A DNA stretch of 62,932 bases, filler included, from Sluysia triapertura (Eukaryota): assembly GCA_046118255.1 (NCBI GenBank). It is 5 parts of 5 records of this genome, joined end to end, with 100 filler letters (N's around TTAATTAATTAA, not from the genome) between each part and the next. Parts side by side here need not be neighbours in the genome. Positions count along the whole stretch, not along the records: positions 38,797 to 50,701 come from JBJNIA010157824.1; 4 more parts are not named here. One strand, 5' to 3'. A program made the position numbers and the translations under genes. This document shows positions 38,797-50,701 of the stretch, piece by piece. The notes beneath the pieces are model-generated. The model worked only from the letters and a program-made list of their open reading frames with translations. It was not told the DNA's origin and did no database searches. How positions within the stretch are numbered: the stretch's first letter is position 1; every line of letters starts with the position of its first letter.

Positions 38797-39150
38797 TACT
38801 CCTGTTGTTGCAATATCAACAGAAACAATAGAATTAGTTAAATCGGTACTTGCACTATCTATAAAATGCCCATCAATTAATGCAATTAATTTCAACCCAT
38901 CATTAATAGAGGTTCCATAAACTCCAACACTTTGAATGTTTCTTAAATCAATGTTTGGTAATTTTAAGGCTGTAAAATCAATAGAAGAATAAAAACCATT
39001 TCTGGGAACTAAAGTATTTTGATAACTTAATTTAAAATTATTAATATTTTCTAATAGTTTTTTAGGAACACTATTTGGAGAAATATCACAATTAATTCCC
39101 GTACTTTCATTTAAAAAAGCAAAAGTAGAAAACCCACCATTATTTTTCAT
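38797..39150 (-). CDS. Putative tail nozzle / tail tubular protein B (P22 gp10-like), 5' part only, truncated by contig end
   Basis: ATG at 39150 after GGTGAG, overlapping the upstream stop. N-terminus 'FLNESTGINCDISPNSV...ENINNF...TLVPRNGF' fits the G.N...P...N...L..R.G pattern of podophage nozzle proteins; follows portal and adaptor. Confidence 0.55.
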
Positions 39151-39766
39151 TTTTCTCACCACCACTTCCACCAAAAAGGAATGTTCCAGTTGGGAAACTA
39201 CCTCCTGTTCCTAAATGGCCATAATCACCTAAAGATTGTTGCCCTTCAACAATCATCGGTGGTAATGCAAAGTAATTTCAATCAATTTGGCGTTTGTCGG
39301 CTGCTCCTATTACCCTTAATGCTTCCATAGTTTTTTGTTCTCAAATTACATAAAATTGCGTCATCATCATATTTAAATAAGATTGCGCCATTATAAAATT
39401 GAAAATGTAGTTATACAATAACCCTTTAGGAATTGGTCAATAAATATCACTAAAAGAAATATAAGGGGCATTTTTAGGTTGGGGGTTAATTTCTGATTTC
39501 ATCATAATTTGGGGAAAAATAGTGTTAAATTTTCCATTCATATAATTAATCGCTTCATTAAATCACACCACAAAGTTTTCTTGTTCTGGGGAAATATTAC
39601 TTACCGTCGCCATATCAGTATAAATATCGGCTGCCGAACAATATAAGTTAGGGTATTTTAAATAATTATACTTAATTACTTCTCAAGGGGTTTTAGTTGC
39701 TTCTGCTTGGGTGTTTTGATTAGCAGACAAGTTTTGATTTAAAAGATTGTTAAAATTATCGGCCAT
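39140..39766 (-). CDS. Putative head-tail adaptor (P22 gp4 / tail tubular protein A-like), 208 aa, code 4
   Basis: AGGAGG RBS, ATG overlapping portal end, open to TAA 39140 only if 5 TGA = Trp; absent from the supplied ORF track. MADNFNNLL...VVWFNEAINYM...WPIPKGLLYNYIFNFIMAQSY. The ORF is solid; function is inferred from the W.NEA motif, size and position. Confidence 0.6.
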
Positions 39767-41891
39767 AATTACCTCCTAATTGATTGTTAGGTTGATAGTT
39801 GTTATTCCCACTTGGTTGAGGGGGTTGTTTTTGATACCCTGTTCCCTCTTCTTCTTGTTGTCTTTGTTGCAACATTTGTTGTTGTTGGACTTGTTGTTGT
39901 TGGGCTTGAATACGATTTTCTAAAGCATTATAAATTTGAATACTTTCTTGTAAATTAACTTTTGCACTAATCATTCCGATTAATCATTGTTTAATGTTTT
40001 CTACATCGGGCATTGAACCTTGTTGTTGACCAAAAATATCAGTTCCTCCATTTGTTGCACAATTAATAATTTCTTTAGTAAAAATATCAATAAACAAAGT
40101 CGCCATTTGGGTTGCATTTTCTAAAGCAATATTTTCAAATTTTCTAATTCAAGGGGCTTTATTTTTCATAGAAGCCGTTTTAATTAATTCAATTTTTAAA
40201 CTATCACTTAAGTTTGGTAAAGAGTTTAGCATTTGGACTAATTGTTGTTGGACTTGATAATCATGGTATTTATCACCTAAATAAATTGGTTCTCCTAAAA
40301 ATTCCACCACCACATTATCAATTTTTTTTAACACGGAAACATCTAAACTAAATTCGGCAACTCCTAAACTTGTACTACTAATAGTTTTATAAGTAAGTTT
40401 TAAAATATTGTTTTTTTCTTTTAAATAATGAAATAATAATTTAGCCATTTTTTTCAAGAAAACTTTATCATTGTAAATAATAATATTATCAATAGTTAAT
40501 GCTGATTGGGTCGTCATTGCTAATGCATTAGGGGAGTTATTAGTTGTTGCTTGATTTCCCATATAAATAGAGTTCAAGTTAAACATTTGTTGAATTCTTT
40601 GCCCTAAAGAATTGATTTCGGCGGTTAACGCTTGAATTGTTGCAATTGGCGGTTCAGTTCATTTTAAAACTTCACTAATGTTTTTGTTATTTTTTAAAGA
40701 GATAGCAATAATTTGGCCCGGAATTGATAAGTCTTGTAATTTTCTATTAGTAGTAATTGCGTCTTCATCCGTTAAAAGGGTTGGAACACAAAAGTTAATA
40801 GAAATATAAGACTTAATCATTTCTAATAAATCTATTTGTTTTTGAGTAGATAAGGCTTTTAAAACGGGAGAATTCCCATAGAAATTTTTACTATCACTAA
40901 TACAATATGAACCAACAATTGGAAAATTATTATGTTTTAGTGAATAAACTTTATATTGTCCTAAATAATGTTCTTCAATTACAAGTTGTTTTTTAGTAAT
41001 GGGGTCAAAGACTTTCCGATAAAGAACACATAGGTCGGCTCTTCTTAAAACATCATCATTATTTAAAATTGGAGTATAGTATAATTTCACTTCATATCAA
41101 ATACGCATACCTTCAATAATAGAAGTTTGGGCTGCTTGTATATTATCATGTAAAAAATCTAATACTTTATGATTTACACCCACTAAATTCCGATAGTTTT
41201 GAATAATATTATGAGCATTTCCCCGTTTTACAATAAAAACATATTTAGCATCTTCAATACTGGTTGCTAATTTATCGGCATAAATATCGGTTGGGTCAAT
41301 TAATTCTAATTGGACGAAATCTTGTGATTGGAATAAATCGGTATTAGTTTTAGGTTCATTTTTAAAAGTAATTTTAGTAAAAGAACACCCATATTCAAAC
41401 ATTTTGCGTTTTCTTTTAACTTCAAAGTTATCAATTTCTAAAGCATTTTCAATACCGATATTGATAGTATCACTAATAGCAGCAAACACATTATTCCCAT
41501 CATCAATATCTCCCATTCCATTTGCAGAAACATTAATCTCTCCTGATTTTAAAATTGTATGGGCAATCTTTTGCTCTAAAATAGAGTTCAAAGTATTTGT
41601 ACTTGGAGTATTATATATTTTTGCAAATTTAGAAAAAGGGCTACTTTCATCAGGTTTTATTCCTTCTTCAATTACATAATTTCCCACTCTTGTATTATTG
41701 TTTTCAATGATATCTTGGGCATCGGCTCATTGTTTTTCTTTAATAACTCTTACAATCATCGCATCTAATAAATGTTGGAGGACTTCAGGAGGCATTTTTT
41801 CAAAGTCATCAGCATGAAAAACTTGTTTTTGTTTTTCAGCAAAAATTTTTCAATCTTCTTTGGTAATATTTTTTAATAAACTTTCTTTCAT
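39756..41891 (-). CDS. Portal protein, P22-like, 711 aa, code 4
   Basis: AAGGAGG RBS. Track ORFs 41097-41687, 40659-41090, 40149-40586 and 39756-39974 are one frame joined by 6 TGA. Motifs 'EYGCSFTKI', 'ELIDPTDIYADKLATSIEDAKYVF', 'FYGNSPVLKALSTQKQID' and a Gln-rich C-terminus; directly downstream of TerL. Confidence 0.8.
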
Positions 41892-41900
41892 ATACCCTCC

Positions 41901-43664
41901 TTAAAATCAGCGAATAGTGTAGAATTGATTTGTTTGCTGACGCTGATTTTCTTTTTTTTGAATTAAATATTCTCTTGTTTTAATAACCGCTTCTCAATGA
42001 TATTTATTCTTGTATTCTTCTCTATTAATTAATTGTGCAAACATATATAAACTATCAATCAAATCAAATGTTAACCCAACTTTCGCCCCTAAAGGAAGTC
42101 TTAATTCTCCTTTAGAAAGAACTTTTTGATATTTAGTTAATTCCTCAATTAATAACATGGTGTTTTCATTTTCTACAATAAATAATTTCTTATCAAACAA
42201 TAATTTATTAATAACGGCAATAGAACTTTGAGGGTGTTTTAAACCCTTAATAGAAGTATCAATATGCACTCCATATTTAGCATAGTTATAAACTAAAGAA
42301 GACACTTCCCTATCTTGTTGTATTTTTCTGTTAGCAGAACAATCACCAGTATGAATAACTTCTCAATATTCATTTAAACTTTTGCCCGTTCATCTATTTT
42401 TGGCTTCTAACATATTCATTGCTTGTTGTTGAATTGTTAAATCTCTATTTGCATAACAATCAACAATATAATATTTCTCCTCTTTAATATCTAACAAGAT
42501 AACTAAAAGGGTTGTATTTGCATTGTTTTCTCCAAAATCAGTGATATAAAAAATGGGTTTATTGTTAACATATTGAGGTTGCAAGTGTTCTGGAATATTA
42601 TTAATTAAATTATCTTTTCATCCCAAAATAATTTCTCTGGTAGAAAAAAACATATCACAAAAAACGTCCATTCAAATTTTCTCTATATTAGTAGATTGCA
42701 ATTGTTTCATTAAAAAGAAATTATCACTATTCGGAGAAACTAACATATCTAAAAGAAAACTTGTTCTATTGTTAACACACTTATTTTTTTTATAATGAGC
42801 AAACATATAATTATCAATTGGAACATATTTAGAATAATAAACTTCGCTACTTGCTAACACATATCTATTTAAAATATTAGAAGCATCGGCATTGGTTTCT
42901 AAAATCATTGTTCTATTAGATTGCATCATAATAGGACGAGAAATTCCATCAATAGTTTCATATTTTAAAGAGCCATCTTTATTTCTCTCATAAATGGCTT
43001 GCCCTTTTTCCCGAAGCCTATTCTCAATTTGGTTTAAGACTTCTTCACTTAACTTATTGGCTTCGGAAACCCAAATATCATTAAAGTTTGAACCCCTAAT
43101 TCCATCATCTTTTTCAGATGACTTAAATTCAAATTGTACCCGATTTTTTAACCTTCAAACCTTATCATTCATCTCTACAAATTGATTTCTGATTGGGTCA
43201 TCATCTTTGGTAATTAAATATTTTAATAATTCATCTTTTTGAATAGTTTTTTGTTGGTGAAGAGTTGGTGCTAAACATAAAATCTTATATTCACTATTGG
43301 TAGAAAGGGCTTTTTTTACAATCTTAAAAGCACTGGCCGTTGTTTTTCCGGTATTTGGTGAACCAACTAAAATCAATTCTTCTGCTTGTGAATTAATAAT
43401 CTCTAATTGATAATTAAAGAACTTAATGTGAAAAACATATTTTCCACAAGCATCACATTGCCCAAAATTTTTCCCTTTTAATTTAATGGAGTTTCCCACC
43501 TTACATAAAGGACATTTAATAATCTCTTCAATTGGAGAAAACTTTTCATTTTTAGTAAGTGGTATATAATCAACATACGATTTTTTAAACTTTAAGGTTT
43601 GTTTAGCAGTTAAACTTTGGCGATATTCATTGATGATTTCTGTTAAAGTACTTTTAATTTTCAT
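41901..43664 (-). CDS. terL: Terminase large subunit, 587 aa, code 4
   Basis: Four track ORFs fuse through 7 TGA to TAA 41901. Q motif (FNYQ), Walker A GSPNTGKT, 'LAPT..Q', 'IRGSNFNDIWVSEA' (Walker B region), coupling motif 'ILETN', RNase H-like nuclease acidic motifs 'ITDFG', 'TGDCSA', 'DLIDSLY'. Confidence 0.92.
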
Positions 43665-44580
43665 AATTTAACCCCGAAACAAACATAACCATTCCCTCAT
43701 CTGCTTGTAAGTTCTTATCAATTACATATCTATCAATATCGGTAATTTTATTAGAAATTTGGGTTTCATAATCTAATTTCTCTTTGGCTAACACCATTTT
43801 TTTACAATATCTTAATGCTTCAATATGAGGTATTCATGATTTATTTTTTAAGATTTTAGAGAAATTAGGGTTTTCCTCTAATGCTTCTTTTAATTTACTT
43901 TTAATATTTAAATCTAAAAGAGTTGTTAATAAAATATCAATTTCCGCTAATAAGGTTTCATCAAACTTATAAGTGGGGTTATTCATAGAAGTTAAGATTT
44001 TAATATATTCACTTTTTTTTAATCTTAATTCTTCATTTTCTAACATTTTTCGGAACTTTCAAATTGGGTCAAAGTTTCAATATTTTTTTAAATCTTCAAC
44101 AGAAAACCCTAACAATTCTTTACTATCAATTGTCGCAAACCGATTTTCTAATAATTTAGTTTTTTCTCCTTCTGATGCATTATCTATATATTTATAATCA
44201 ACTTCTAATTGGGCTAATGCTAATTTTTGGTCATCATTGAAAATGGGGTTATTTATAGAACCACCATTATTTTTTAATGCTTGCCGATGAATAATATTAA
44301 TTCTTCTCTCTTTTGTTATTCTTTTTTCTTTTACAAAATCTTCTCATAGTTTTTGTTTTAAATACTTTTGTTCCATTTTTACAATCTCAATATACATATT
44401 AGTAATATTAGAGTTTAGCAATTTATTATCTTTTTTGGCTAATTTGTCTAATAAACAAGCAATTTTTAAAACCTTGATTTTTTCTTGTTCATCACGGAAA
44501 TTCTCTTTTAGCAAAATCTCTTTTGTTTTTGCTTCAAAAGTATTTTCTCGTTTCATTCACAATTCAAATTGATATTCCAA
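43654..44580 (-). CDS. Hypothetical protein, 308 aa, code 4; possible terminase small subunit by position
   Basis: TTG start after AAGGA. Track ORFs 44344-44556 and 43834-44046 are joined; 5 TGA in total; stop overlaps the TerL start by 11 bp. Function is positional only. Confidence 0.65.
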
Positions 44581-44630
44581 AACATTTCCTTTGCTAATTG
44601 TTGTTATAAATTCAATATAACCATAAAGAA

Positions 44631-44662
44631 TTTACAACAACAATTTAAGTTGTTGTTGAAAA
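44631..44662 (-). terminator. Stem-loop after putative capsid gene
   Basis: CAACAACAA / TTGTTGTTG inverted repeat just after TAA 44663; weak U tract. Confidence 0.5.
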
Positions 44663-46486
44663 TTAAACTCTCACTGTTAGAGTGCTTACATAATCAGAGT
44701 TCGTTAATAAACCCATTCAAGAGTATTTAATAACGACATTTGAACTTGGAATTGAACCTTTAGGAATTGTTGCGGAAACATAAGTTCCTGTTGTTTGGGT
44801 TCCGATTGGAACAATTTGTAGTTTGTTGCCTAAAGTATTTTTTCATTTATAAGAAATGTCGGCTGCTGTTTTTCCATTTGGAACAATTGCAACGGTATAT
44901 TTTGGAATTGCAATATCAACGGTAAATGGGTTAGCATCTCATTTAATATAGTCAAGAGCATCATAGAATTCGGCAACTAAATAGTTTTTAGTATTAATTG
45001 CAGGCAATAAATCTACTCCCCCATATAAAGAGTTAGCAACAAAGTTGAATTTCATATCTTGGTTCGGAGTAATTGGAACAGCCCCAGTTCCATTAGAGTT
45101 TAAAGCCATCCCGATTGAACTTGGGTAAGTTTGGGTATTATCAGGGTTTCATTTATACCCCACCATAATTTTCCCTGCTTCTAATTTTGGAACAAAGTTA
45201 GAACTAAACTCAATGAATTTTGTTGTATCTACAAAACTATTTACTTGTGTTGCATGTGATACAAACTCTATATTTGTTGATTTTCATTGATAAATATTAG
45301 TTTTATTAGAAATGTATAAGAATGCTAATTCATTACTTGCAATTGCTTCTCCTCCCACGGAATTTGGGGAAGTTTCTCCGGCACTTGCTTTATAATAAGC
45401 CCCCATTAAAGAACCTATTGGGGCTTGCATAATTTTAATTTGGTTTAATAATGATGTTCTTCCACCATACATTACATTGTTATCATTTTGAGCGTTAAAT
45501 GATGTTGTTTCCCCTTTAGGGCCATTAATCATCACCATTTTTTGCACATCTGCTCCATAGTAATTTAACATATATTGATAAAAACTAAAGTCAGTATATA
45601 ACAATGGAGCGGTAAACGCATCGGCTTGACGGTCCATTTTTGCTTGTAGTCCGATTAAATAATTAGTAAAAATATGGAAATCAAATTTTTTAGAAGCAGT
45701 TGACGAAATTGAATTAACATCTACATCAAAGCAAGTTCCGATTCTTTTTTTGTATCTTACTTTGTCCATTCCAAAAATGGCTCCATCAGTTAATTGTTCT
45801 TTTGTTGTTGCTTTAAAGAAGTTTGTTTGGAAAATTGATTTGTCTTCTAATGAGTGAACTTTAATGTTATTACTCATAGCATTACAGAAATCAATAATAT
45901 TATATTTATTAGAAATATCAGCATTAAAATCAACAGGCATCCCATTTTCATTAACCGCTTTTTCAGTTTCAAAAGAAATATCAACGGAAAGGACTTTATC
46001 ATTGTTTTTTACATATTGTATTTTTTCAAAAAATGATAGGAAATCACCGAAGAAATGTTTTAATTGCGCAGTATCAATTAATTGTAAATTTCATTTTCAG
46101 ATTGTTCCTCAACAGTGTTTAATGTGAATATTTTCTGAACTAATGGTTAAAATAGTTTCTGTTGCTGCTGCATTACTTGTTCCATACCCATCTTTAAAAG
46201 TACTAATTCCCCCTTTTGGAGCGAGAACAGAATAAGGGACTGAAACCACAAAGGCTTTATTTGGGCCTTCTAATGAAACTGTTAGTTCATTTGGTAAGCC
46301 TCCTTTTGGTAAATCAGCAAATAACGAATTACGGAATGTATAAATTCAAAATCGTTCTGTTAGTGATCTTGTTAGCATTGGGGCATTAGTTAGGGTTGAT
46401 GTATTAGATGTATTCCCTGGAGCGTTAGTTTGCAATAATGGAGCCCCATACTCCACCGCAAAGTTTAATGATTGTAAATCAGCCAT
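44663..46486 (-). CDS. Putative major capsid protein with beta-rich C-terminal extension, 607 aa, code 4
   Basis: MADLQSLNFAVEYGAPLLQTNAPG... is open to TAA 44663 only with 9 TGA = Trp and includes track ORF 45284-45940. G/A/S/T/N-rich composition, follows a scaffold-like gene, ends at a stem-loop. The ORF is solid; the capsid call is inference. Confidence 0.65.
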
Positions 46487-46505
46487 ATATTAGTCTTTCT
46501 TAATA

Positions 46506-47177
46506 CTAATATCTTTTATTATCAAGGACCTCATCTAACATATCATTGATTTGTTCTGCTTCTGATTTGATAGTTTTTTTCGTATCTTCAAGGACTTTAG
46601 CAAAGTCTTCTTTATAAAAATCACTTGGAGAAATTCTTAACCCTTCATTAGCCGCTTTTTTCTTATTATTAATGAAATTATTAATCTCATCTTGGAAAAA
46701 AATGCGTTTTAGTTTGGCTTTATCATTGCTTTTATGATAAATCTCACACATTTCGGGGTTCATATTTCCCATGATTTTATTTTCTAAAAACTTTTTATCT
46801 CTTGAAGATAATGTTATACCTTCATTATCAAAAACATCTTCAATGGTTTCTATGATGTCTTCTTTTAAATAAAGATTAGTATTTTGTTGTTGTTGTAATT
46901 GGGCCGCTTGAATTTTCTTTAAATTCTCATTTTGTTCTTTAATTAATTGTTCTAAAGCAGATAACTTATCATTTTGAGTATTTTGGTTTTCTACTTTTTT
47001 TGCAATTCTATTTTGAATGTATTGTTGGGTTTTTAAAGAGTTTTCTTCGGCTTGGTGTTTAAATTTAATTAATTCTTCGTATTCACCTTTAGTAAGGGTA
47101 ATTTCCTCATTATTTTGTGAATTATCAACTTGGGTTGCTTCTTCAAGAACTTGAGAAGCAGGGTTTTCTGTGGGCAT
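46506..47177 (-). CDS. Putative capsid scaffolding protein, 223 aa
   Basis: Acidic N-terminus, E/K/Q coiled-coil composition, directly upstream of the putative capsid gene; no Trp codons; ends TAG. Confidence 0.6.
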   Translation of the reverse strand: MPTENPASQVLEEATQVDNSQNNEEITLTKGEYEELIKFKHQAEENSLKTQQYIQNRIAKKVENQNTQNDKLSALEQLIKEQNENLKKIQAAQLQQQQNTNLYLKEDIIETIEDVFDNEGITLSSRDKKFLENKIMGNMNPEMCEIYHKSNDKAKLKRIFFQDEINNFINNKKKAANEGLRISPSDFYKEDFAKVLEDTKKTIKSEAEQINDMLDEVLDNKRY

Positions 47178-47339
47178 TATTGGGCTTTTCTTTCCAAAAT
47201 AACGTCCTTCCTATTAAAAATATTTGCATAGTTTTACAAGGTTAGAGCCTGTTATTTTTAATAAATTACTTATTTTAAAAAGAGATATTTCATCTCCATA
47301 AACAATATATCTCTTCTTATATTATTTAGCATTTTTCCT

Positions 47340-47369
47340 AAAAAAAAAGGTCCCTAAAGGACCTTTTTT
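47340..47369 (-). terminator. Intrinsic (bidirectional-type) terminator
   Basis: Minus strand AAAAAAGGTCC-TTTAG-GGACCTTTTTTTTT, about 20 bp after TAA 47389. Confidence 0.85.
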
Positions 47370-47388
47370 CTAAAATTGATTAGTAAAC

Positions 47389-48204
47389 TTATTTTTCTTG
47401 GACCATTTCTACCCGTTGATTATTTAAAATTTCATGCATTTTAGCCTCTTTTTCATCTAAATGTAATCTTTTATACACTTCTTCAAGATAATCATAGTTA
47501 ATTCCAACAATATTGACTTTATTTCACATAATAAACAACTTATCAGTATCAACCATTTCTCGTAAATTATTTCAAATACTATTTACAAGCAATTTTTCAT
47601 TATTCGTTAAATAATGAGTTTGTAAATAAATATAATCAATAAACAAACTATCAACTGCAAGTACTTGATTATAATTATTCGTTAACAAAAATACTTCTTG
47701 TAATTTCTTAATTTTGGCTTTCATATCATCAGAGATTTTTAAATATTGAGGTTTAATAACTTCTGCAAACTCCTCATTTTTTTCCCTAATTTGTTTACAA
47801 TTATCTAATGCATTTCTAATTTTTTCATCTTTCGCAAGGGTATGGAAAAAAATAATATGCCCATTAAAAAAACTTACTAAATAATTATCTTTTGTTAAAA
47901 ATTCACAAAGATATTGCTCACTTGTTTCATCAAAAGTTATCGTAATTTCTTTTTTTAACCCTAATCTAATGTATTGAAAATTTTCTTTTCCATTCTCTTC
48001 TTTTTTAAACTCTAAATAAAAACTTTCATTCCCCTCTTCTTGATCTACAACAATTTTCTTCTCTTTTCCTAAAACAATTCTAAATTGCACTTCATCAGCA
48101 TTTAATAAATTAATCTTTTGGGGTTTAAAATTACTAATTCTTAAATGTGCAACTAATTCATCAAATTCCACTGGTTTAGTAATTACTTGATAAACCATTT
48201 CCAT
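47389..48204 (-). CDS. Hypothetical phage protein, 271 aa, code 4
   Basis: Track ORF 47572-48204 extends through 2 TGA to TAA 47389, right before a clear terminator; AAGGA RBS. Confidence 0.8.
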
Positions 48205-48206
48205 TA

Positions 48207-48428
48207 TTAGTCCTTCACTTCTTTTACAACTTTAATTTTTTTCTCTTCTTGTCGTTCTTCTTTAATACTTTCTAAACATTGAAAAGGTAAACTTAAAATT
48301 ACGGAAATTAAATAAATCACCCCAAATGTTAATGTGTAAATTATTGCAAATGGTAAAAGTAATCAACTTAATAAATTTTTTTCCCCTTCTGGAAATCACT
48401 CCATAATAAACTCTTTAAAAAATTCCAT
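48207..48428 (-). CDS. Small membrane protein, 73 aa, code 4
   Basis: AAGGAG RBS; MEFFKEFIMEWFPEGEKNLLSWLLLPFAIIYTLTFGVIYLISVILSLPFQCLESIKEERQEEKKIKVVKEVKD; 2 TGA; long hydrophobic segment and charged tail; stop is 2 bp before the next ATG. Confidence 0.75.
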
Positions 48429-48459
48429 CTTTTCTCCTTCTATTGATTATTCATCTTTT

Positions 48460-48487
48460 ATCTTACCATATAAAAAAAAACAAACAA
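48460..48487 (-). promoter_or_regulatory. Sigma70-type promoter with extended -10
   Basis: TTGTTT-16 bp-TAAGAT with TGn (TGGTAAGAT), about 30 bp upstream of the 73-aa gene. Confidence 0.55.
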
Positions 48488-48506
48488 GTTTTTTTCCTTG
48501 TTTGTT
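48471..48506 (-). terminator. Intrinsic terminator overlapping the downstream promoter
   Basis: Minus strand AACAAACAAG-GAAAAAAA-CTTGTTTGTT followed by a T run. Confidence 0.65.
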
Positions 48507-48692
48507 GTGATTAAAAGAATAAACTCTAACTATTAAGTTAGAAATTTCCCATTCTTGATTAGAAAGTGAGAAAAAAATGACTTATGAATAACAAATTTTA
48601 ATATTAGTTTAAAGAGAGTAATAGAAAAACAATTTATTTCATAACATCTTTGTAAAGCAACATATCACCAATCTACATTACTTTACTTTTTT

Positions 48693-48720
48693 ATCTTACC
48701 ATCTTTTTCTATATTTCCAA
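48693..48720 (-). promoter_or_regulatory. Second sigma70-type promoter with the same extended -10
   Basis: TTGGAA-16 bp-TAAGAT; shares ATGGTAAGATAAAA with the promoter at 48460. Confidence 0.5.
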
Positions 48721-48739
48721 ATATTTAATTAAAAAAAAA

Positions 48740-49010
48740 TTCCCCTCTCTCTTCTACAGGTATTTTCTTCTTCCTTTCTTTTAAAAATTCCCTCTTCTCT
48801 ATACAAGTCTTCTTCTCTCTCTTCTCTACAAGTATTTCCTTCTTCTCTTATTCCTTCATTCCCTCATTCCTTTCTTCTCTCATTCCTTTATTCTCTCATT
48901 TCACTCTTCCCTTCTTCTCTTATTTCCTTCTTCTCTCATTCCCTTCTTCTTCTCTTAAATTCCTTCCTTGTCCCCTCCTTTCCTCTCGCGCTCTCCTATT
49001 CTCCTTTTAT
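48740..49010 (+). repeat. Polypyrimidine (CT-rich) low-complexity tract
   Basis: Mostly C/T on +, with repeated TTCTCTCATTCC-like words; no long ORF on the purine strand. Confidence 0.85.
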
Positions 49011-49012
49011 TT

Positions 49013-50075
49013 GATTAAATTTTATTTTTTTTTTTTTTCAGAGAAAAAAAAATAAAATTTAATCTATGTCTTCTTCTCTTATATAAATTTTTTTATATTT
49101 ATCTTCTCTTATCTAAATTTTTTTATTTATATTTTCTTATAATTAATTGTTATTTTTTTTACCATAGTAAAAAAAAATAACAATTAATTAATATTATTTC
49201 ATTTGATTAAATTTTATTTTTTTTTATGGGGGTAAAAAAAAATAAAATTTAATCTATATTATCTTATTTATAATTTTTTATATTTATCTTCTCTTATATA
49301 TTATTTCTTATTAATTAATTTTTTTTTTACCATAGTAAAAAAAAAAATTAATTAATTAATATTACTTATTTTAATTATTTCTTTTATAAATTCATTAATA
49401 TATGATTAATTTTTTTTTACTATGGTAAAAAAAATTAATCATATATTATTTTATCTATTTATATTTCTTATATATTTATATTTATTAATATATATAAATA
49501 TATTGATATACGCGCGTAAGCGCGTGTGCGCGCAGATGCGTACGGGTGCGTACACACGTACACGTACCTGAATGCGCGCTACATATATGTACGCGTGCGC
49601 GTACGCGATATTCCTTATATAAATTTATTATATTAATAGTAATATAAAGTTAATTTTATTTTTTTTTACCCCCATAAAAAAAAATAAAATTAACTTAAAT
49701 TTAACTATTAATAAATTCCTTATTTAATAAATTCTTTATTAATAATGCTCTTATTAATAATTCATTATTGATAAATTCATTATTAGTAATTTATTTAAGT
49801 TAATTTTTATTTTTTTTTACTATGGTAAAAAAAATAAAAATTAACTAATATTAATTAACTTAAATTTAATTAATTTAAATTTCCTTATTGATAAATTCAT
49901 TATTGATAAATTCCTTACTTATAAATTTATTTAAGTTAGTTTTATTTTTTTTTTACTATGGTAAAAAAAAATAAAACTAACTAATATTAATTAACTTAAA
50001 TTTAATTATTTACTTATATTTATTTAGTGTTAATTTTATTTTTTTTTTACTATGGTAAAAAAAAATAAAATTAAC
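49013..50075. repeat. Array of nine ~45-52 bp palindromes (hairpin/cruciform units)
   Basis: Units at about 49013-49064, 49140-49190, 49205-49254, 49311-49355, 49397-49447, 49647-49696, 49798-49846, 49934-49982 and 50029-50075. Structure is arm-Tn-core-An-arm; cores are TACTATGGTA/TACCATAGTA (6), TATGGGGGTA/TACCCCCATA (2) and one variant. Confidence 0.92.
49509..49608. other. CpG-dense alternating purine-pyrimidine island
   Basis: About 20 CG dinucleotides in 100 bp within an almost pure AT region; a smaller copy lies near 50137-50153. Confidence 0.85.
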
Positions 50076-50172
50076 TAATTATATTTATATTCTTTATATT
50101 TATTTGTTTAATATATTTATATATATATTATATTTATACGCGCGCACGCGCGAGTATATATATATTAATATC

Positions 50173-50258
50173 TTGATTTATACACACGCGAGTAATATAT
50201 ACAAAGATATTGATTTATACACGCACAAGTAATATATACAAAGTTATTGATTTATACC
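50173..50258 (+). repeat. 37-bp tandem repeat (about 2.3 copies), iteron-like
   Basis: TTGATTTATACAC....AGTAATATATACAAAG.TA with starts at 50173, 50210 and 50247. Confidence 0.8.
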
Positions 50259-50701
50259 CTCTTTTTACAAGATGCTTATATTACAATTGTCTTATATTAC
50301 AAGATGACTTATCTTCTTCTTACCATTATTCACATAAATTTATCTTCTAATAATTGTTAAATTTACCTATACCTTCATAAACCTATCTCTTTTCATCTAC
50401 AATCAAAATTTATTAAATTATAGGAAATCATATTACCTTATATATTCTCAAGGAATATGATATATAAGAGGTATCTTTAAATAGATGTTTTAATCATTCC
50501 TTATATAAGAGGGTGGTATATATAAAGGAATTACCATGAGAGATATTCAATGATGATTAGAGGGGGTATATCTCAAGATATTGAATATATATATGTGCGC
50601 GTATATGATATTATTTTTATTATATATATAATACTTATGTAAATTTATGAATATAGTAAATTTTAAGATAGATACAAGGGGTTAGTTATATGTTGTATTG
50701 T

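What the first reader, a model, noticed from the sequence alone, without database searches (positions are those of the whole stretch)
49013..50075. Array of nine large hairpins whose arms differ in sequence but stay complementary
Seen: each unit is an AT-rich arm, a T run, a ~10-bp core, an A run and the complementary arm. Arms differ between units (TAATTAATTGTTA/TAACAATTAATTA; ATATATGATTAA/TTAATCATATAT; AGTTAGTTTTA/TAAAACTAACT; GATTAAATTTTA/TAAAATTTAATC) yet always pair, so structure is conserved rather than sequence. The core TACTATGGTA occurs in both orientations, and a second core TATGGGGGTA occurs once in each orientation either side of the CpG island. ATGGTAA in the core also matches the phage's promoter motif ATGGTAAGAT. 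Inference: a cruciform/ssDNA-hairpin platform such as a replication origin, packaging or genome-end signal, or protein/RNA-polymerase decoy array. I do not recognise it as a described element.
Basis: partly seen in the sequence, partly recalled or inferred. Interest (0 to 1): 0.75.

Follow-up and report, generated by a model that had tools for sequence, protein, structure and literature searches.

The report
Nine perfect AT hairpins, orphan phage
A phage with no detectable relatives carries, in its 2.3-kb non-coding control region, nine perfect AT-only palindromes that keep a conserved loop while their arms change in matched pairs; this shows the hairpin form matters, most likely as start sites for replication or transcription.

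Summary
There are nine perfect palindromes with 19-22 bp stems: 186 stem pairs, no mismatch, no G-T. No shuffle reaches a stem longer than 14 bp. Six share the loop TACTATGGT (four on +, two on -), two carry TGGGGG/CCCCCA, and one is degenerate. The inner T8/A8 tracts never vary, while the outer arms differ and every difference is mirrored (7 of 17 pairs changed on both sides, none on one side).

The units are tandemly duplicated modules, each next to short direct repeats. They lie in a 2.3-kb gene-free region between a leftward structural operon (terminase, TGA = Trp) and a rightward gene. That region also holds alternating purine-pyrimidine GC blocks, a pyrimidine tract and iteron-like repeats.

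No relative of the array or of three tested proteins was found in any collection, so conservation cannot be tested.

Best reading (about 0.35): cruciform or hairpin initiation sites in the phage's replication-origin region. Rivals are hairpin-gated promoters, genome-end or injection signals, neutral palindromes kept perfect by template switching, and a structured RNA.

It matches no described family and ranks as a new variant of a known kind.

The parts
49013..49064 (.). Hairpin unit U1: 21-bp perfect stem, 10-nt loop TTTTTCAGAG (degenerate core); arms identical to U3
49140..49190 (-). Hairpin unit U2: 21-bp perfect stem; loop reads TACTATGGT on the minus strand
49205..49254 (+). Hairpin unit U3: 22-bp perfect stem, loop TGGGGG on the plus strand
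49310..49356 (-). Hairpin unit U4: 19-bp perfect stem; loop TACTATGGT on the minus strand; paralogue of U2 with three mirrored arm differences
49396..49448 (+). Hairpin unit U5: 22-bp perfect stem, loop TACTATGGT on the plus strand, unique arms
49647..49696 (-). Hairpin unit U6: 22-bp perfect stem, loop CCCCCA on plus (TGGGGG on minus)
49798..49846 (+). Hairpin unit U7: 20-bp perfect stem, loop TACTATGGT on plus
49934..49982 (+). Hairpin unit U8: 20-bp perfect stem, loop TACTATGGT on plus; differs from U7 by mirrored changes only
50029..50075 (+). Hairpin unit U9: 19-bp perfect stem, loop TACTATGGT on plus
49055..49141 (+). 28-30-bp direct repeats (about 3 copies) between U1 and U2; a second set lies at 49248-49311 between U3 and U4
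49706..49797 (+). Six tandem 15-bp iteron-like repeats abutting the left arm of U7; a second set of 3.7 copies at 49876-49931 abuts U8
49506..49607 (.). GC island made of four alternating purine-pyrimidine blocks (13, 15, 22 and 28 nt) in a region that is otherwise about 10% GC
50135..50257 (+). Alternating purine-pyrimidine GC block followed by three 37-bp direct repeats; the first repeat carries a DnaA-box-like TTATACACA
50265..50312 (+). Three 16-bp direct repeats
48738..49000 (+). Pyrimidine tract (86% C+T, 7 G in 263 nt) with 16-nt periodic repeats, immediately left of U1
48693..48702 (-). ATGGTAAGAT, an extended -10-like promoter motif (TGn + TAAGAT). A second exact copy lies at 48460-48469 (-), just upstream of the first gene of the operon. 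A one-mismatch copy lies at 50317-50326 (-), to the right of the array
   Evidence: geometry read
48479..48506 (-). Canonical intrinsic terminator (stem then T run) of this phage, unlike the nine hairpins
47392..48431 (-). First two genes of the leftward operon next to the array: a small membrane-type protein and a 271-aa protein of unknown function. Both are read with TGA as sense
41901..43667 (-). Large terminase gene (open only if TGA is sense), which marks the leftward block as the structural and packaging module
50605..50701 (+). Sigma-70-like promoter (ATGATA-16-TATAAT), AAGGGG ribosome site and ATG at 50691: start of a rightward gene cut off by the piece's edge

Best explanation
The nine units are DNA-level cruciform or hairpin elements in the phage's main cis-acting control region, most likely its replication-origin region. 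Shown: each unit is a perfect AT-only palindrome with invariant inner T8/A8 tracts. There is a conserved loop (TACTATGGT in six units). The outer arms vary but are always mirrored, and short direct-repeat arrays lie beside the units. Inferred: negative supercoiling or local unwinding lets these easily melted palindromes extrude. Each then presents the conserved 9-nt loop as single-stranded DNA to a phage-encoded or host initiation protein, such as a nickase, primase, helicase loader or RNA polymerase making a primer. The neighbouring iteron-like repeats would act as duplex binding sites that recruit that protein. This is the division of labour known for the nic hairpin and bind repeats of rolling-circle origins, and for the ssiA/ssiB hairpins of IncQ oriV. 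The multiplicity comes from tandem duplication of hairpin-plus-repeat modules.
For: Hairpin reality and significance. Structure is maintained rather than sequence: 100% of 102 cells are paired, 7 of 17 pairs changed on both sides, none on one side only, 0 of 500 shuffles reach this, and slid registers give 55-71% pairing. In paralogous modules (91% and 87% identical) every arm difference is mirrored, including a shift in T-run/A-run length. U1 and U3 keep 42 identical arm bases although their loops differ entirely and their adjoining spacers have diverged (the two modules are 87% identical over their whole length, which includes the identical arms). There are no G-T pairs in 186 pairs, as expected for DNA rather than RNA pairing, although the test has low power. 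Setting: a 2.26-kb gene-free stretch lies between divergent gene blocks, with tandem 15-, 16-, 28-30- and 37-bp direct repeats, AT-repeat blocks next to GC blocks and two DnaA-box-like sites. Precedents from papers: RepB of pMV158 nicks a 9-mer exposed in the loop of a supercoil-extruded hairpin and binds tandem direct repeats 84 bp away (PMC1851628). Mycoplasma plasmids share that origin type (PMC3541243). RSF1010 oriV uses two hairpin-forming ssi sites on opposite strands for priming (PMC8567376). The array is not a set of terminators: this phage's own terminators are canonical and look different.
Against: No replication gene is visible in the 11.9 kb available, and none of the 20 protein pieces scanned hits a Rep, primase or helicase family. 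Nine copies in both orientations is far more than any described origin uses. GC and AT skew do not change sign across the array. DnaA-box-like sites are not enriched (5 observed against 2.4 expected). The loop matches the pMV158 nick 9-mer at only 6 of 9 positions, and the cleaved dinucleotide differs. No relatives exist in any collection searched, so conservation over evolutionary time is untested. Perfect complementarity could be produced by template-switch correction without selection for a function.
Confidence: 0.35

Rival explanations
1. Hairpin-gated or hairpin-form promoters. Either the loop is read as single-stranded promoter DNA, as by the phage N4 virion RNA polymerase, or the duplex core is a -10 element whose availability is switched by cruciform extrusion. 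This would give arrays of tandem early promoters firing outward.
For: The loop begins with TACTAT, a -10-like hexamer that keeps the two critical positions (A at 2, T at 6). The core also overlaps TGGTAAAAA, which resembles the extended -10-like ATGGTAAGAT found in front of the leftward operon (sequence). The six TACTATGGT units point outward: two leftward on the left, four rightward on the right. In N4, conserved loop and stem bases combine with variable stem bases that need only keep pairing, and extrusion is driven by supercoiling (PMC4496689).
Against: The outward orientation pattern has a chance probability of about 0.1. Three units have loops with no -10 likeness. N4 promoter hairpins have 5-7 bp stems and 3-nt loops, not 19-22 bp stems and 6-10-nt loops. 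No RNA polymerase gene is visible. The sigma-70 scan did not call these sites. ATGGTAAGAT is not enriched in this piece.
Confidence: 0.22
2. Tandemly amplified palindromes without a function of their own. They would be kept perfect by intrastrand template switching (quasi-palindrome correction) during replication and tolerated because the host lacks efficient palindrome cleavage.
For: The units are parts of recent tandem duplications. Template switching converts both arms in one step, so mirrored differences need no selection. No relatives are available to show long-term conservation.
Against: The loop and the T8/A8 tracts are invariant in six units whose arms and spacers have diverged. U1 and U3 arms are identical although their loops differ entirely and their spacers have diverged. 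Loops and arm types are recombined between units. All nine units have T run before A run. The palindromes occur only in this control region and nowhere in 9.6 kb of neighbouring DNA.
Confidence: 0.18
3. Genome-end, packaging or injection-control region, comparable with the untranslated repeat regions and injection stop signal of phage T5 or with terminal-repeat regions of short-tailed phages.
For: [quoted passage not shown] The array here adjoins the operon that holds the terminase.
Against: There is no sequence similarity to any phage record. DnaA-box-like sites are not paired or enriched. The terminase gene is more than 5 kb away. Nothing in the piece marks a terminus, and no reads are available.
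Confidence: 0.1
4. Structured non-coding RNA: the whole region is transcribed leftward from the promoter-like site at 50317-50326, giving a purine-rich RNA with nine long A-U hairpins, for example as RNase III substrates or a protein sponge.
For: The spacers are strongly strand-biased, purine-rich on the minus strand like the coding strand of the leftward genes. A promoter-like ATGGTAAGAA lies to the right of the array and the next terminator to the left lies at 48479-48506. The adjacent 190-nt unit folds well.
Against: There is no G-U wobble in 186 pairs. Loops occur in both orientations, so one transcript would carry two different loop sets. There is no Rfam match. The strand bias is explained by the shared orientation of duplicated repeats.
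Confidence: 0.08
5. Assembly or amplification artefact (fold-back chimeras).
For: Palindromes can arise from multiple-displacement amplification, and no reads could be inspected.
Against: Nine small palindromes share loops, are embedded in ordered diverged tandem modules and carry mirrored substitutions. This is not what fold-back chimeras look like.
Confidence: 0.03

Closest known systems
Double-strand origin of pMV158-family rolling-circle plasmids (nic hairpin IR-I plus bind repeats), which includes mycoplasma plasmids
   Same: A supercoil-extruded hairpin exposes a conserved 9-nt sequence in its loop, with tandem direct repeats within about 100 bp acting as the high-affinity site. Hosts with TGA = Trp carry such plasmids (PMC1851628, PMC3541243). 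The loop here shares 6 of 9 positions with the published nick 9-mer, including the first five.
   Different: There are six copies in both orientations instead of one. Stems are AT-only and three times longer. The cleaved dinucleotide is not conserved. No Rep_2 or HUH gene is seen. The element is a tailed phage with a terminase.
ssiA/ssiB of IncQ plasmid RSF1010 oriV
   Same: Hairpin-forming sites lie on opposite strands next to iterons, a GC-rich and an AT-rich segment, and serve as strand-specific priming sites once the origin is opened (PMC8567376).
   Different: RSF1010 has two 40-nt sites with GC-containing stems, recognised through bases 5' of the hairpin. No RepB'-like primase is seen here, and this element has nine sites.
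Early promoters of phage N4 (hairpin promoters of the virion RNA polymerase)
   Same: Recognition is of an extruded DNA hairpin. Conserved loop and some stem bases combine with variable stem bases that must only keep pairing. There are several copies within about 1 kb of non-coding DNA, and extrusion depends on supercoiling (PMC4496689).
   Different: N4 has 5-7 bp stems and a 3-nt loop, and all copies have one orientation. The giant polymerase gene cannot be checked here.
Untranslated repeat regions and injection stop signal of T5-like phages
   Same: [quoted passage not shown]
   Different: The T5 region is conserved in order across 25 phages, has eight paired DnaA boxes and lies in the terminal repeat. 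Here there are no relatives, no paired boxes and no sequence similarity.
Homologous regions (hrs) of baculoviruses and the intergenic region of Ff filamentous phages (from general knowledge; not fetched)
   Same: Both are arrays of palindromes or hairpins inside non-coding repeats that serve as origins and, in baculoviruses, also as transcription enhancers. In Ff phages, five hairpins serve packaging and both origins.
   Different: Baculovirus palindromes are imperfect and are bound as duplex by a dimer. Ff is a single-stranded phage. Neither has AT-only T-run/A-run stems.

Membership tests
pMV158-type rolling-circle double-strand origin | Nick 9-mer TACTACG/AC (mycoplasma plasmids: TACTAC(C)G/A) in the loop of an inverted repeat (PMC1851628, PMC3541243) | tested here: not met
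   The loop TACTATGGT matches 6 of 9 positions. The G/A cleavage dinucleotide is G/G here (sequence). For a single 9-mer comparison this is not significant.
pMV158-type rolling-circle double-strand origin | Two or three tandem direct repeats (bind locus) within about 100 bp of the hairpin | tested here: met
   15-bp repeats (6 and 3.7 copies) and 28-30-bp repeats (2-3 copies) abut the units.
pMV158-type rolling-circle double-strand origin | Adjacent Rep (Rep_2, HUH) initiator gene; one origin per replicon | tested here: not met
   There is no Rep, HUH or primase hit in 10 pieces scanned against Pfam or 20 against PHROGs. There are six loop copies in two orientations. Genes beyond 50701 cannot be seen.
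N4-type hairpin promoters | 5-7 bp stem with a 3-nt loop carrying conserved bases (PMC4496689) | tested here: not met
   Stems are 19-22 bp and loops 6-10 nt.
N4-type hairpin promoters | Conserved loop, with variable stem positions that keep pairing | tested here: met
   7 of 17 pairs changed on both sides, 100% paired. Six loops are identical.
N4-type hairpin promoters | Virion-packaged giant RNA polymerase encoded by the phage | not testable with these tools
   Only 11.9 kb of the genome is available, and no polymerase is found in it.
T5-type injection stop / untranslated repeat region | Paired DnaA boxes (TTWTNCACA) in fixed positions inside large inverted repeats; location in the terminal repeat; conserved order among relatives (10.1101/866236) | tested here: not met
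   Two boxes in the non-coding region are unpaired, and 5 in the whole window against 2.4 expected is not enrichment. There is no similarity to phage records. Terminal-repeat status is not testable.
Intrinsic (rho-independent) terminators | G+C-containing stem followed by a T run | tested here: not met
   The T run lies inside the stem and no T tail follows it. The scan calls only 48479-48506 and a site in the GC island. This phage's own terminator at 47343-47369 has the canonical A-run, GC stem, T-run form.
Any Rfam RNA family | Match at or above the family's gathering score | tested here: not met
   The best hits score 16-28 bits against thresholds of 50-90, and most of them, including the best, fall on the GC island.
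Iteron-type theta origin | Tandem iterons next to an AT-rich unwinding block and DnaA box, with an initiator gene alongside | tested here: inconclusive
   Three 37-bp repeats, a (TTATAT)n block and two DnaA-box-like sites lie at 50079-50334. The initiator gene is not visible.

The most novel reading that the evidence does not exclude
The region is a supercoil-sensing module of a kind not described before. An array of readily extruding AT cruciforms, flanked by Z-DNA-prone alternating purine-pyrimidine blocks, displays in its loops a single-stranded mimic of the -10 promoter element (TACTAT). Depending on the superhelical state of the injected genome, it would capture or release the host RNA polymerase sigma subunit or a phage polymerase. 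It would thus act as a structural switch or sponge that times the change between the two divergent gene blocks.
Probability: 0.1. Interest if true: 0.85.

Novelty: new variant of a known kind. Interest (0 to 1): 0.6.

Why it matters
Hairpin or cruciform DNA as a functional signal is well documented in only a handful of systems: N4 promoters, rolling-circle origins, IncQ priming sites and filamentous-phage origins. This array offers nine natural variants of one such signal in a single locus, with in-locus covariation that separates what must be kept (loop, T/A tracts, pairing) from what is free (outer arm sequence). It sits in a tailed phage that reads TGA as Trp and has no detectable relatives, a part of the virosphere where replication and transcription signals are essentially unknown. 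If the loops are initiation sites, this would be the largest natural set of cruciform-dependent sites in one control region. If not, it is a clean natural example of palindrome maintenance by templated correction.

Tried and rejected
Exact core 24-mer and 22-mer searches gave no viral contigs, four metagenome hits without hairpins and no genomes. The core with a free 4-nt loop gave 30 viral hits, all single and without arrays. An arm-based pattern without the core gave two viral and five genome hits, all single chance sites. An architecture pattern (T9-loop-A9, 55-85 nt, T9) gave 24 viral loci with no comparable array and no perfect stem above 17 bp.

The protein route to relatives also failed. 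The 268-aa piece of the 609-codon ORF gave nothing by back-translated patterns, word search, tblastn against phages, phmmer against 1.84 billion representatives or PDB. Terminase and portal pieces gave nothing by word search or tblastn. Exact-product look-ups found nothing. BLASTN of the region against phages gave nothing. Against plasmids it gave only two short low-complexity AT matches.

A structure prediction of the 219-aa piece of the neighbouring 271-aa protein had mean pLDDT 36 and was unusable, so no fold search was run.

Four readings were rejected. Terminators are excluded. Coding potential is excluded because only one 66-codon ORF without a ribosome site runs through the GC island. 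H-DNA is not supported for the pyrimidine tract because it has no mirror repeat of 9 nt or more. Dyad symmetry of core orientations about position 49376 has a chance probability of about 0.1-0.14, so it is not used as evidence.

MAFFT alignment A1 of all nine units puts the two loop classes one column out of register. The formal pair count was therefore made on the six same-loop units only (A4).
Full report
WHAT IS THERE. The piece 38797-50701 is 25-35% GC. On the minus strand it carries a run of genes that are open only if TGA is read as a sense codon. With TAA/TAG as the only stops, the summed length of ORFs of 150 codons or more rises from 1436 to 3158 codons. In eight such ORFs (3040 codons) there are 36 in-frame TGA against a single TGG, so TGA stands for Trp. 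Three collinear stop-free pieces of the 41901-43667 ORF give weak but consistent hits to large-terminase families. One piece of the next ORF (39756-41900) gives a weak connector hit. The leftward block is therefore a phage structural and packaging module. It starts at 48431, preceded by AAGGAG. From 48432 to 50690 there is no credible ORF. At 50691 an ATG preceded by AAGGGG and a sigma-70-like promoter (50605-50632) opens a rightward gene that the edge of the piece cuts off. The finding therefore lies in a 2.26-kb gene-free region between divergent gene blocks.

THE OBSERVATION. In total there are 186 stem pairs with no mismatch and no G-T pair. Dinucleotide-preserving shuffles of 49000-50100 reach a longest stem of 9.6 bp on average (maximum 14). 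Each unit folds far better than its shuffles (z = -6.4 to -8.9). Six units have the loop TACTATGGT: U5, U7, U8 and U9 on the plus strand, U2 and U4 on the minus strand. U3 and U6 have TGGGGG in opposite orientations. U1 has TTTTTCAGAG. All nine read T run, loop, A run on either strand. The inner eight T-A pairs never vary, and the outer 10-13 pairs do.

STRUCTURE IS MAINTAINED, NOT SEQUENCE. On an alignment of the six same-loop units, all 102 cells of 17 pairs are standard pairs. Seven pairs show changes on both sides and none shows a change on one side only. No shuffle out of 500 reaches any of the five measures, and sliding the partner by 1-3 columns drops pairing to 55-71%. The units are parts of tandemly duplicated modules. 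A 136-bp module (U7, U8; 91% identity) continues as a 94-bp copy (U9). A two-hairpin module of about 190 bp (U1-U2 against U3-U4) is 87% identical. In these paralogue pairs every difference inside an arm is mirrored in the other arm, including a one-base shift of the border between arm and T run.

U1 and U3 have identical arms (42 bases) although their loops are unrelated and the adjoining spacers have diverged (the two modules are 87% identical overall). Loop types and arm types are also recombined: U6 has the arms of U7-U9 with the loop of U3. This means the hairpin form is real in vivo. Either it is what selection sees, or it is the template for intrastrand correction. The absence of any G-T pair points to DNA rather than RNA pairing, but with few G or C in the arms the test is weak.

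THE SURROUNDINGS. Every unit adjoins short direct repeats, all in the same orientation:
- 16-nt repeats within an 86% pyrimidine tract before U1 (48738-49000).
- 28-30-bp repeats before U2 and U4.
- 13-bp repeats before U5.
- Six and 3.7 copies of a 15-bp repeat before U7 and U8.

All alternating purine-pyrimidine runs of 12 nt or more in the piece lie in this region: four blocks at 49506-49607, then 50135-50152, 50179-50190, 50216-50227 and 50585-50607. CpG is depleted in the genes (observed/expected 0.60) and enriched in the island (2.3). To the right of the array lie a (TTATAT)n block, three 37-bp repeats, three 16-bp repeats and two sites fitting the relaxed DnaA-box consensus. Such sites are not enriched overall.

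On the minus strand, ATGGTAAGAT occurs at 48460-48469, in a good position for the promoter of the operon, and at 48693-48702. The second copy is followed by a 190-nt unit that folds well (z = -4.8) and ends at a canonical terminator (48479-48506). A one-mismatch copy lies at 50317-50326, to the right of the array. As a count the motif is not above chance in this piece.

RELATIVES. None were found. The core, the core with a free loop, the arms without the core, and an architecture pattern were scanned through viral, metagenome and genome collections. All returned only isolated chance matches without arrays. BLASTN against phage and plasmid records found nothing meaningful. Three protein pieces found nothing by word search, nor by tblastn against phages. 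The longest piece found nothing in 1.84 billion representatives. One caveat applies: relatives that also read TGA as sense would be stored as short fragments, and the word search sees only proteins of 0.55-1.75 times the query length. Conservation across evolution therefore cannot be assessed, and all inference rests on in-locus paralogues.

WHAT IT IS NOT. It is not a set of intrinsic terminators, because the T run is inside the stem, no T tail follows, and the phage's own terminators are canonical. It matches no Rfam family. It is not coding. An assembly artefact is very unlikely, because fold-back chimeras do not give nine ordered, diverged units with mirrored substitutions.

HOW IT MOST LIKELY WORKS. 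I commit to DNA-level cruciform or hairpin elements in the phage's origin or initiation region, with confidence about 0.35. The following is shown: perfect AT-only palindromes, a conserved loop, invariant tracts, covarying arms, adjacent iteron-like repeats, and a gene-free divergent setting. The following is inferred: supercoiling or local opening extrudes the palindromes, the loop is read as single-stranded DNA by an initiation protein, and the direct repeats are the duplex recruitment sites.

Published precedents support this division of labour. pMV158 RepB cleaves a 9-mer in the loop of a supercoil-extruded hairpin and binds tandem repeats 84 bp away (PMC1851628). The same origin type exists in mycoplasma plasmids (PMC3541243). 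RSF1010 uses two hairpin-forming priming sites on opposite strands within oriV (PMC8567376).

Against this reading: no replication gene is visible, the copy number is unprecedented for an origin, the skews show no sign change, and the loop matches the published nick 9-mer at only 6 of 9 positions with a different cleaved dinucleotide. Membership in that family is therefore not claimed.

RIVALS.
- Hairpin-form or cruciform-gated promoters (0.22). The loop starts with the -10-like TACTAT, and the six cores point outward from between U4 and U5. N4 shows the same logic of conserved loop plus pairing-only stem positions (PMC4496689). However, the N4 dimensions are not met and the orientation pattern has a chance probability near 0.1.
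- Neutral amplified palindromes kept perfect by template switching (0.18). This explains mirrored changes without selection, but not the invariant loop and tracts amid diverged arms and spacers.
- A genome-end, packaging or injection-control region like the T5 untranslated repeat regions (0.10; bioRxiv 10.1101/866236).
- A leftward structured RNA (0.08).
- An artefact (0.03).

NOVELTY AND SCORE. The element belongs to the known kind 'hairpin or cruciform DNA signals in non-coding control regions of phages and plasmids', but it fits none of the described families. Its size, AT-only T-run/A-run stems, number of copies and in-locus covariation are unusual, so I rate it a new variant of a known kind. 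Interest is 0.6.

SLIPS AND STEPS LEFT OUT.
1. In one search my script printed a translation of the small ORF 48213-48431 under table 4, with TGA shown as a residue. In my reasoning I also read two short ORFs of the window the same way. I did not reuse, save or send those strings, and all tool queries were stop-free pieces given by reference.
2. One search printed the bounds of the stop-free pieces so that they could be searched apart. If in-frame TGA codons count as breaks, that listing is a slip too. This report gives counts only.
3. I used it in no tool, and the comparison above rests on the sequence printed in PMC1851628 and PMC3541243.

Loci from giant-virus bins that pattern scans returned (L010, L033, L036 and several of L042-L063) were only scanned for hairpins. 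Nothing outside 38797-50701 was used, and no N was filled.

Noticed in passing
window 48507-48692, minus strand: A 190-nt unit lies between a promoter-like ATGGTAAGAT (48693-48702) and a canonical terminator (48479-48506). The 226-nt stretch 48470-48695 (minus strand), which contains it together with the terminator, folds with z = -4.8. It has no ORF above 9 codons and no Rfam match. It is a candidate small RNA directly upstream of the structural operon's promoter.
   Followed up: partly
window 48738-49000: A 263-nt tract is 86% pyrimidine on the plus strand (only 7 G) with 16-nt periodic repeats. If transcribed leftward it would give a purine-rich RNA full of GGA/AGGA motifs. No mirror repeat of 9 nt or more was found, so H-DNA potential is modest.
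   Followed up: partly
window 49506-49607, 50135-50152, 50179-50190, 50216-50227, 50585-50607: All alternating purine-pyrimidine runs of 12 nt or more in the piece lie in the non-coding region and are CG/CA-rich, so they are Z-DNA-prone and full of short CG palindromes. CpG observed/expected is 0.60 in the genes and 2.3 in the island. Three related 36-nt copies exist (D9). The third overlaps the -35 region of the rightward promoter.
   Followed up: partly
window 38797-48431, minus strand: The genetic code reads TGA as Trp: 36 in-frame TGA against 1 TGG in 3040 codons, with stops almost only TAA. This fits a host among the Mollicutes or a fully recoded phage. No tRNA gene is present in the piece.
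   Followed up: yes
window 50430-50600: Several imperfect inverted repeats are built around CCTTATATA/TATATAAGG motifs just upstream of the sigma-70-like promoter at 50605-50632. They look like operators for the rightward gene (sequence).
   Followed up: no
window 44663-46489, minus strand: The 268-aa stop-free piece of this 609-codon ORF has no relative at E <= 0.001 among 1.84 billion representative proteins, in PDB, PHROGs or Pfam. It is an orphan protein in the head-gene neighbourhood.
   Followed up: yes
window 49470-49503: A tenth, weaker AT palindrome (12-bp stem, 10-nt loop) without T/A tracts or the conserved loop lies between U5 and the GC island.
   Followed up: no
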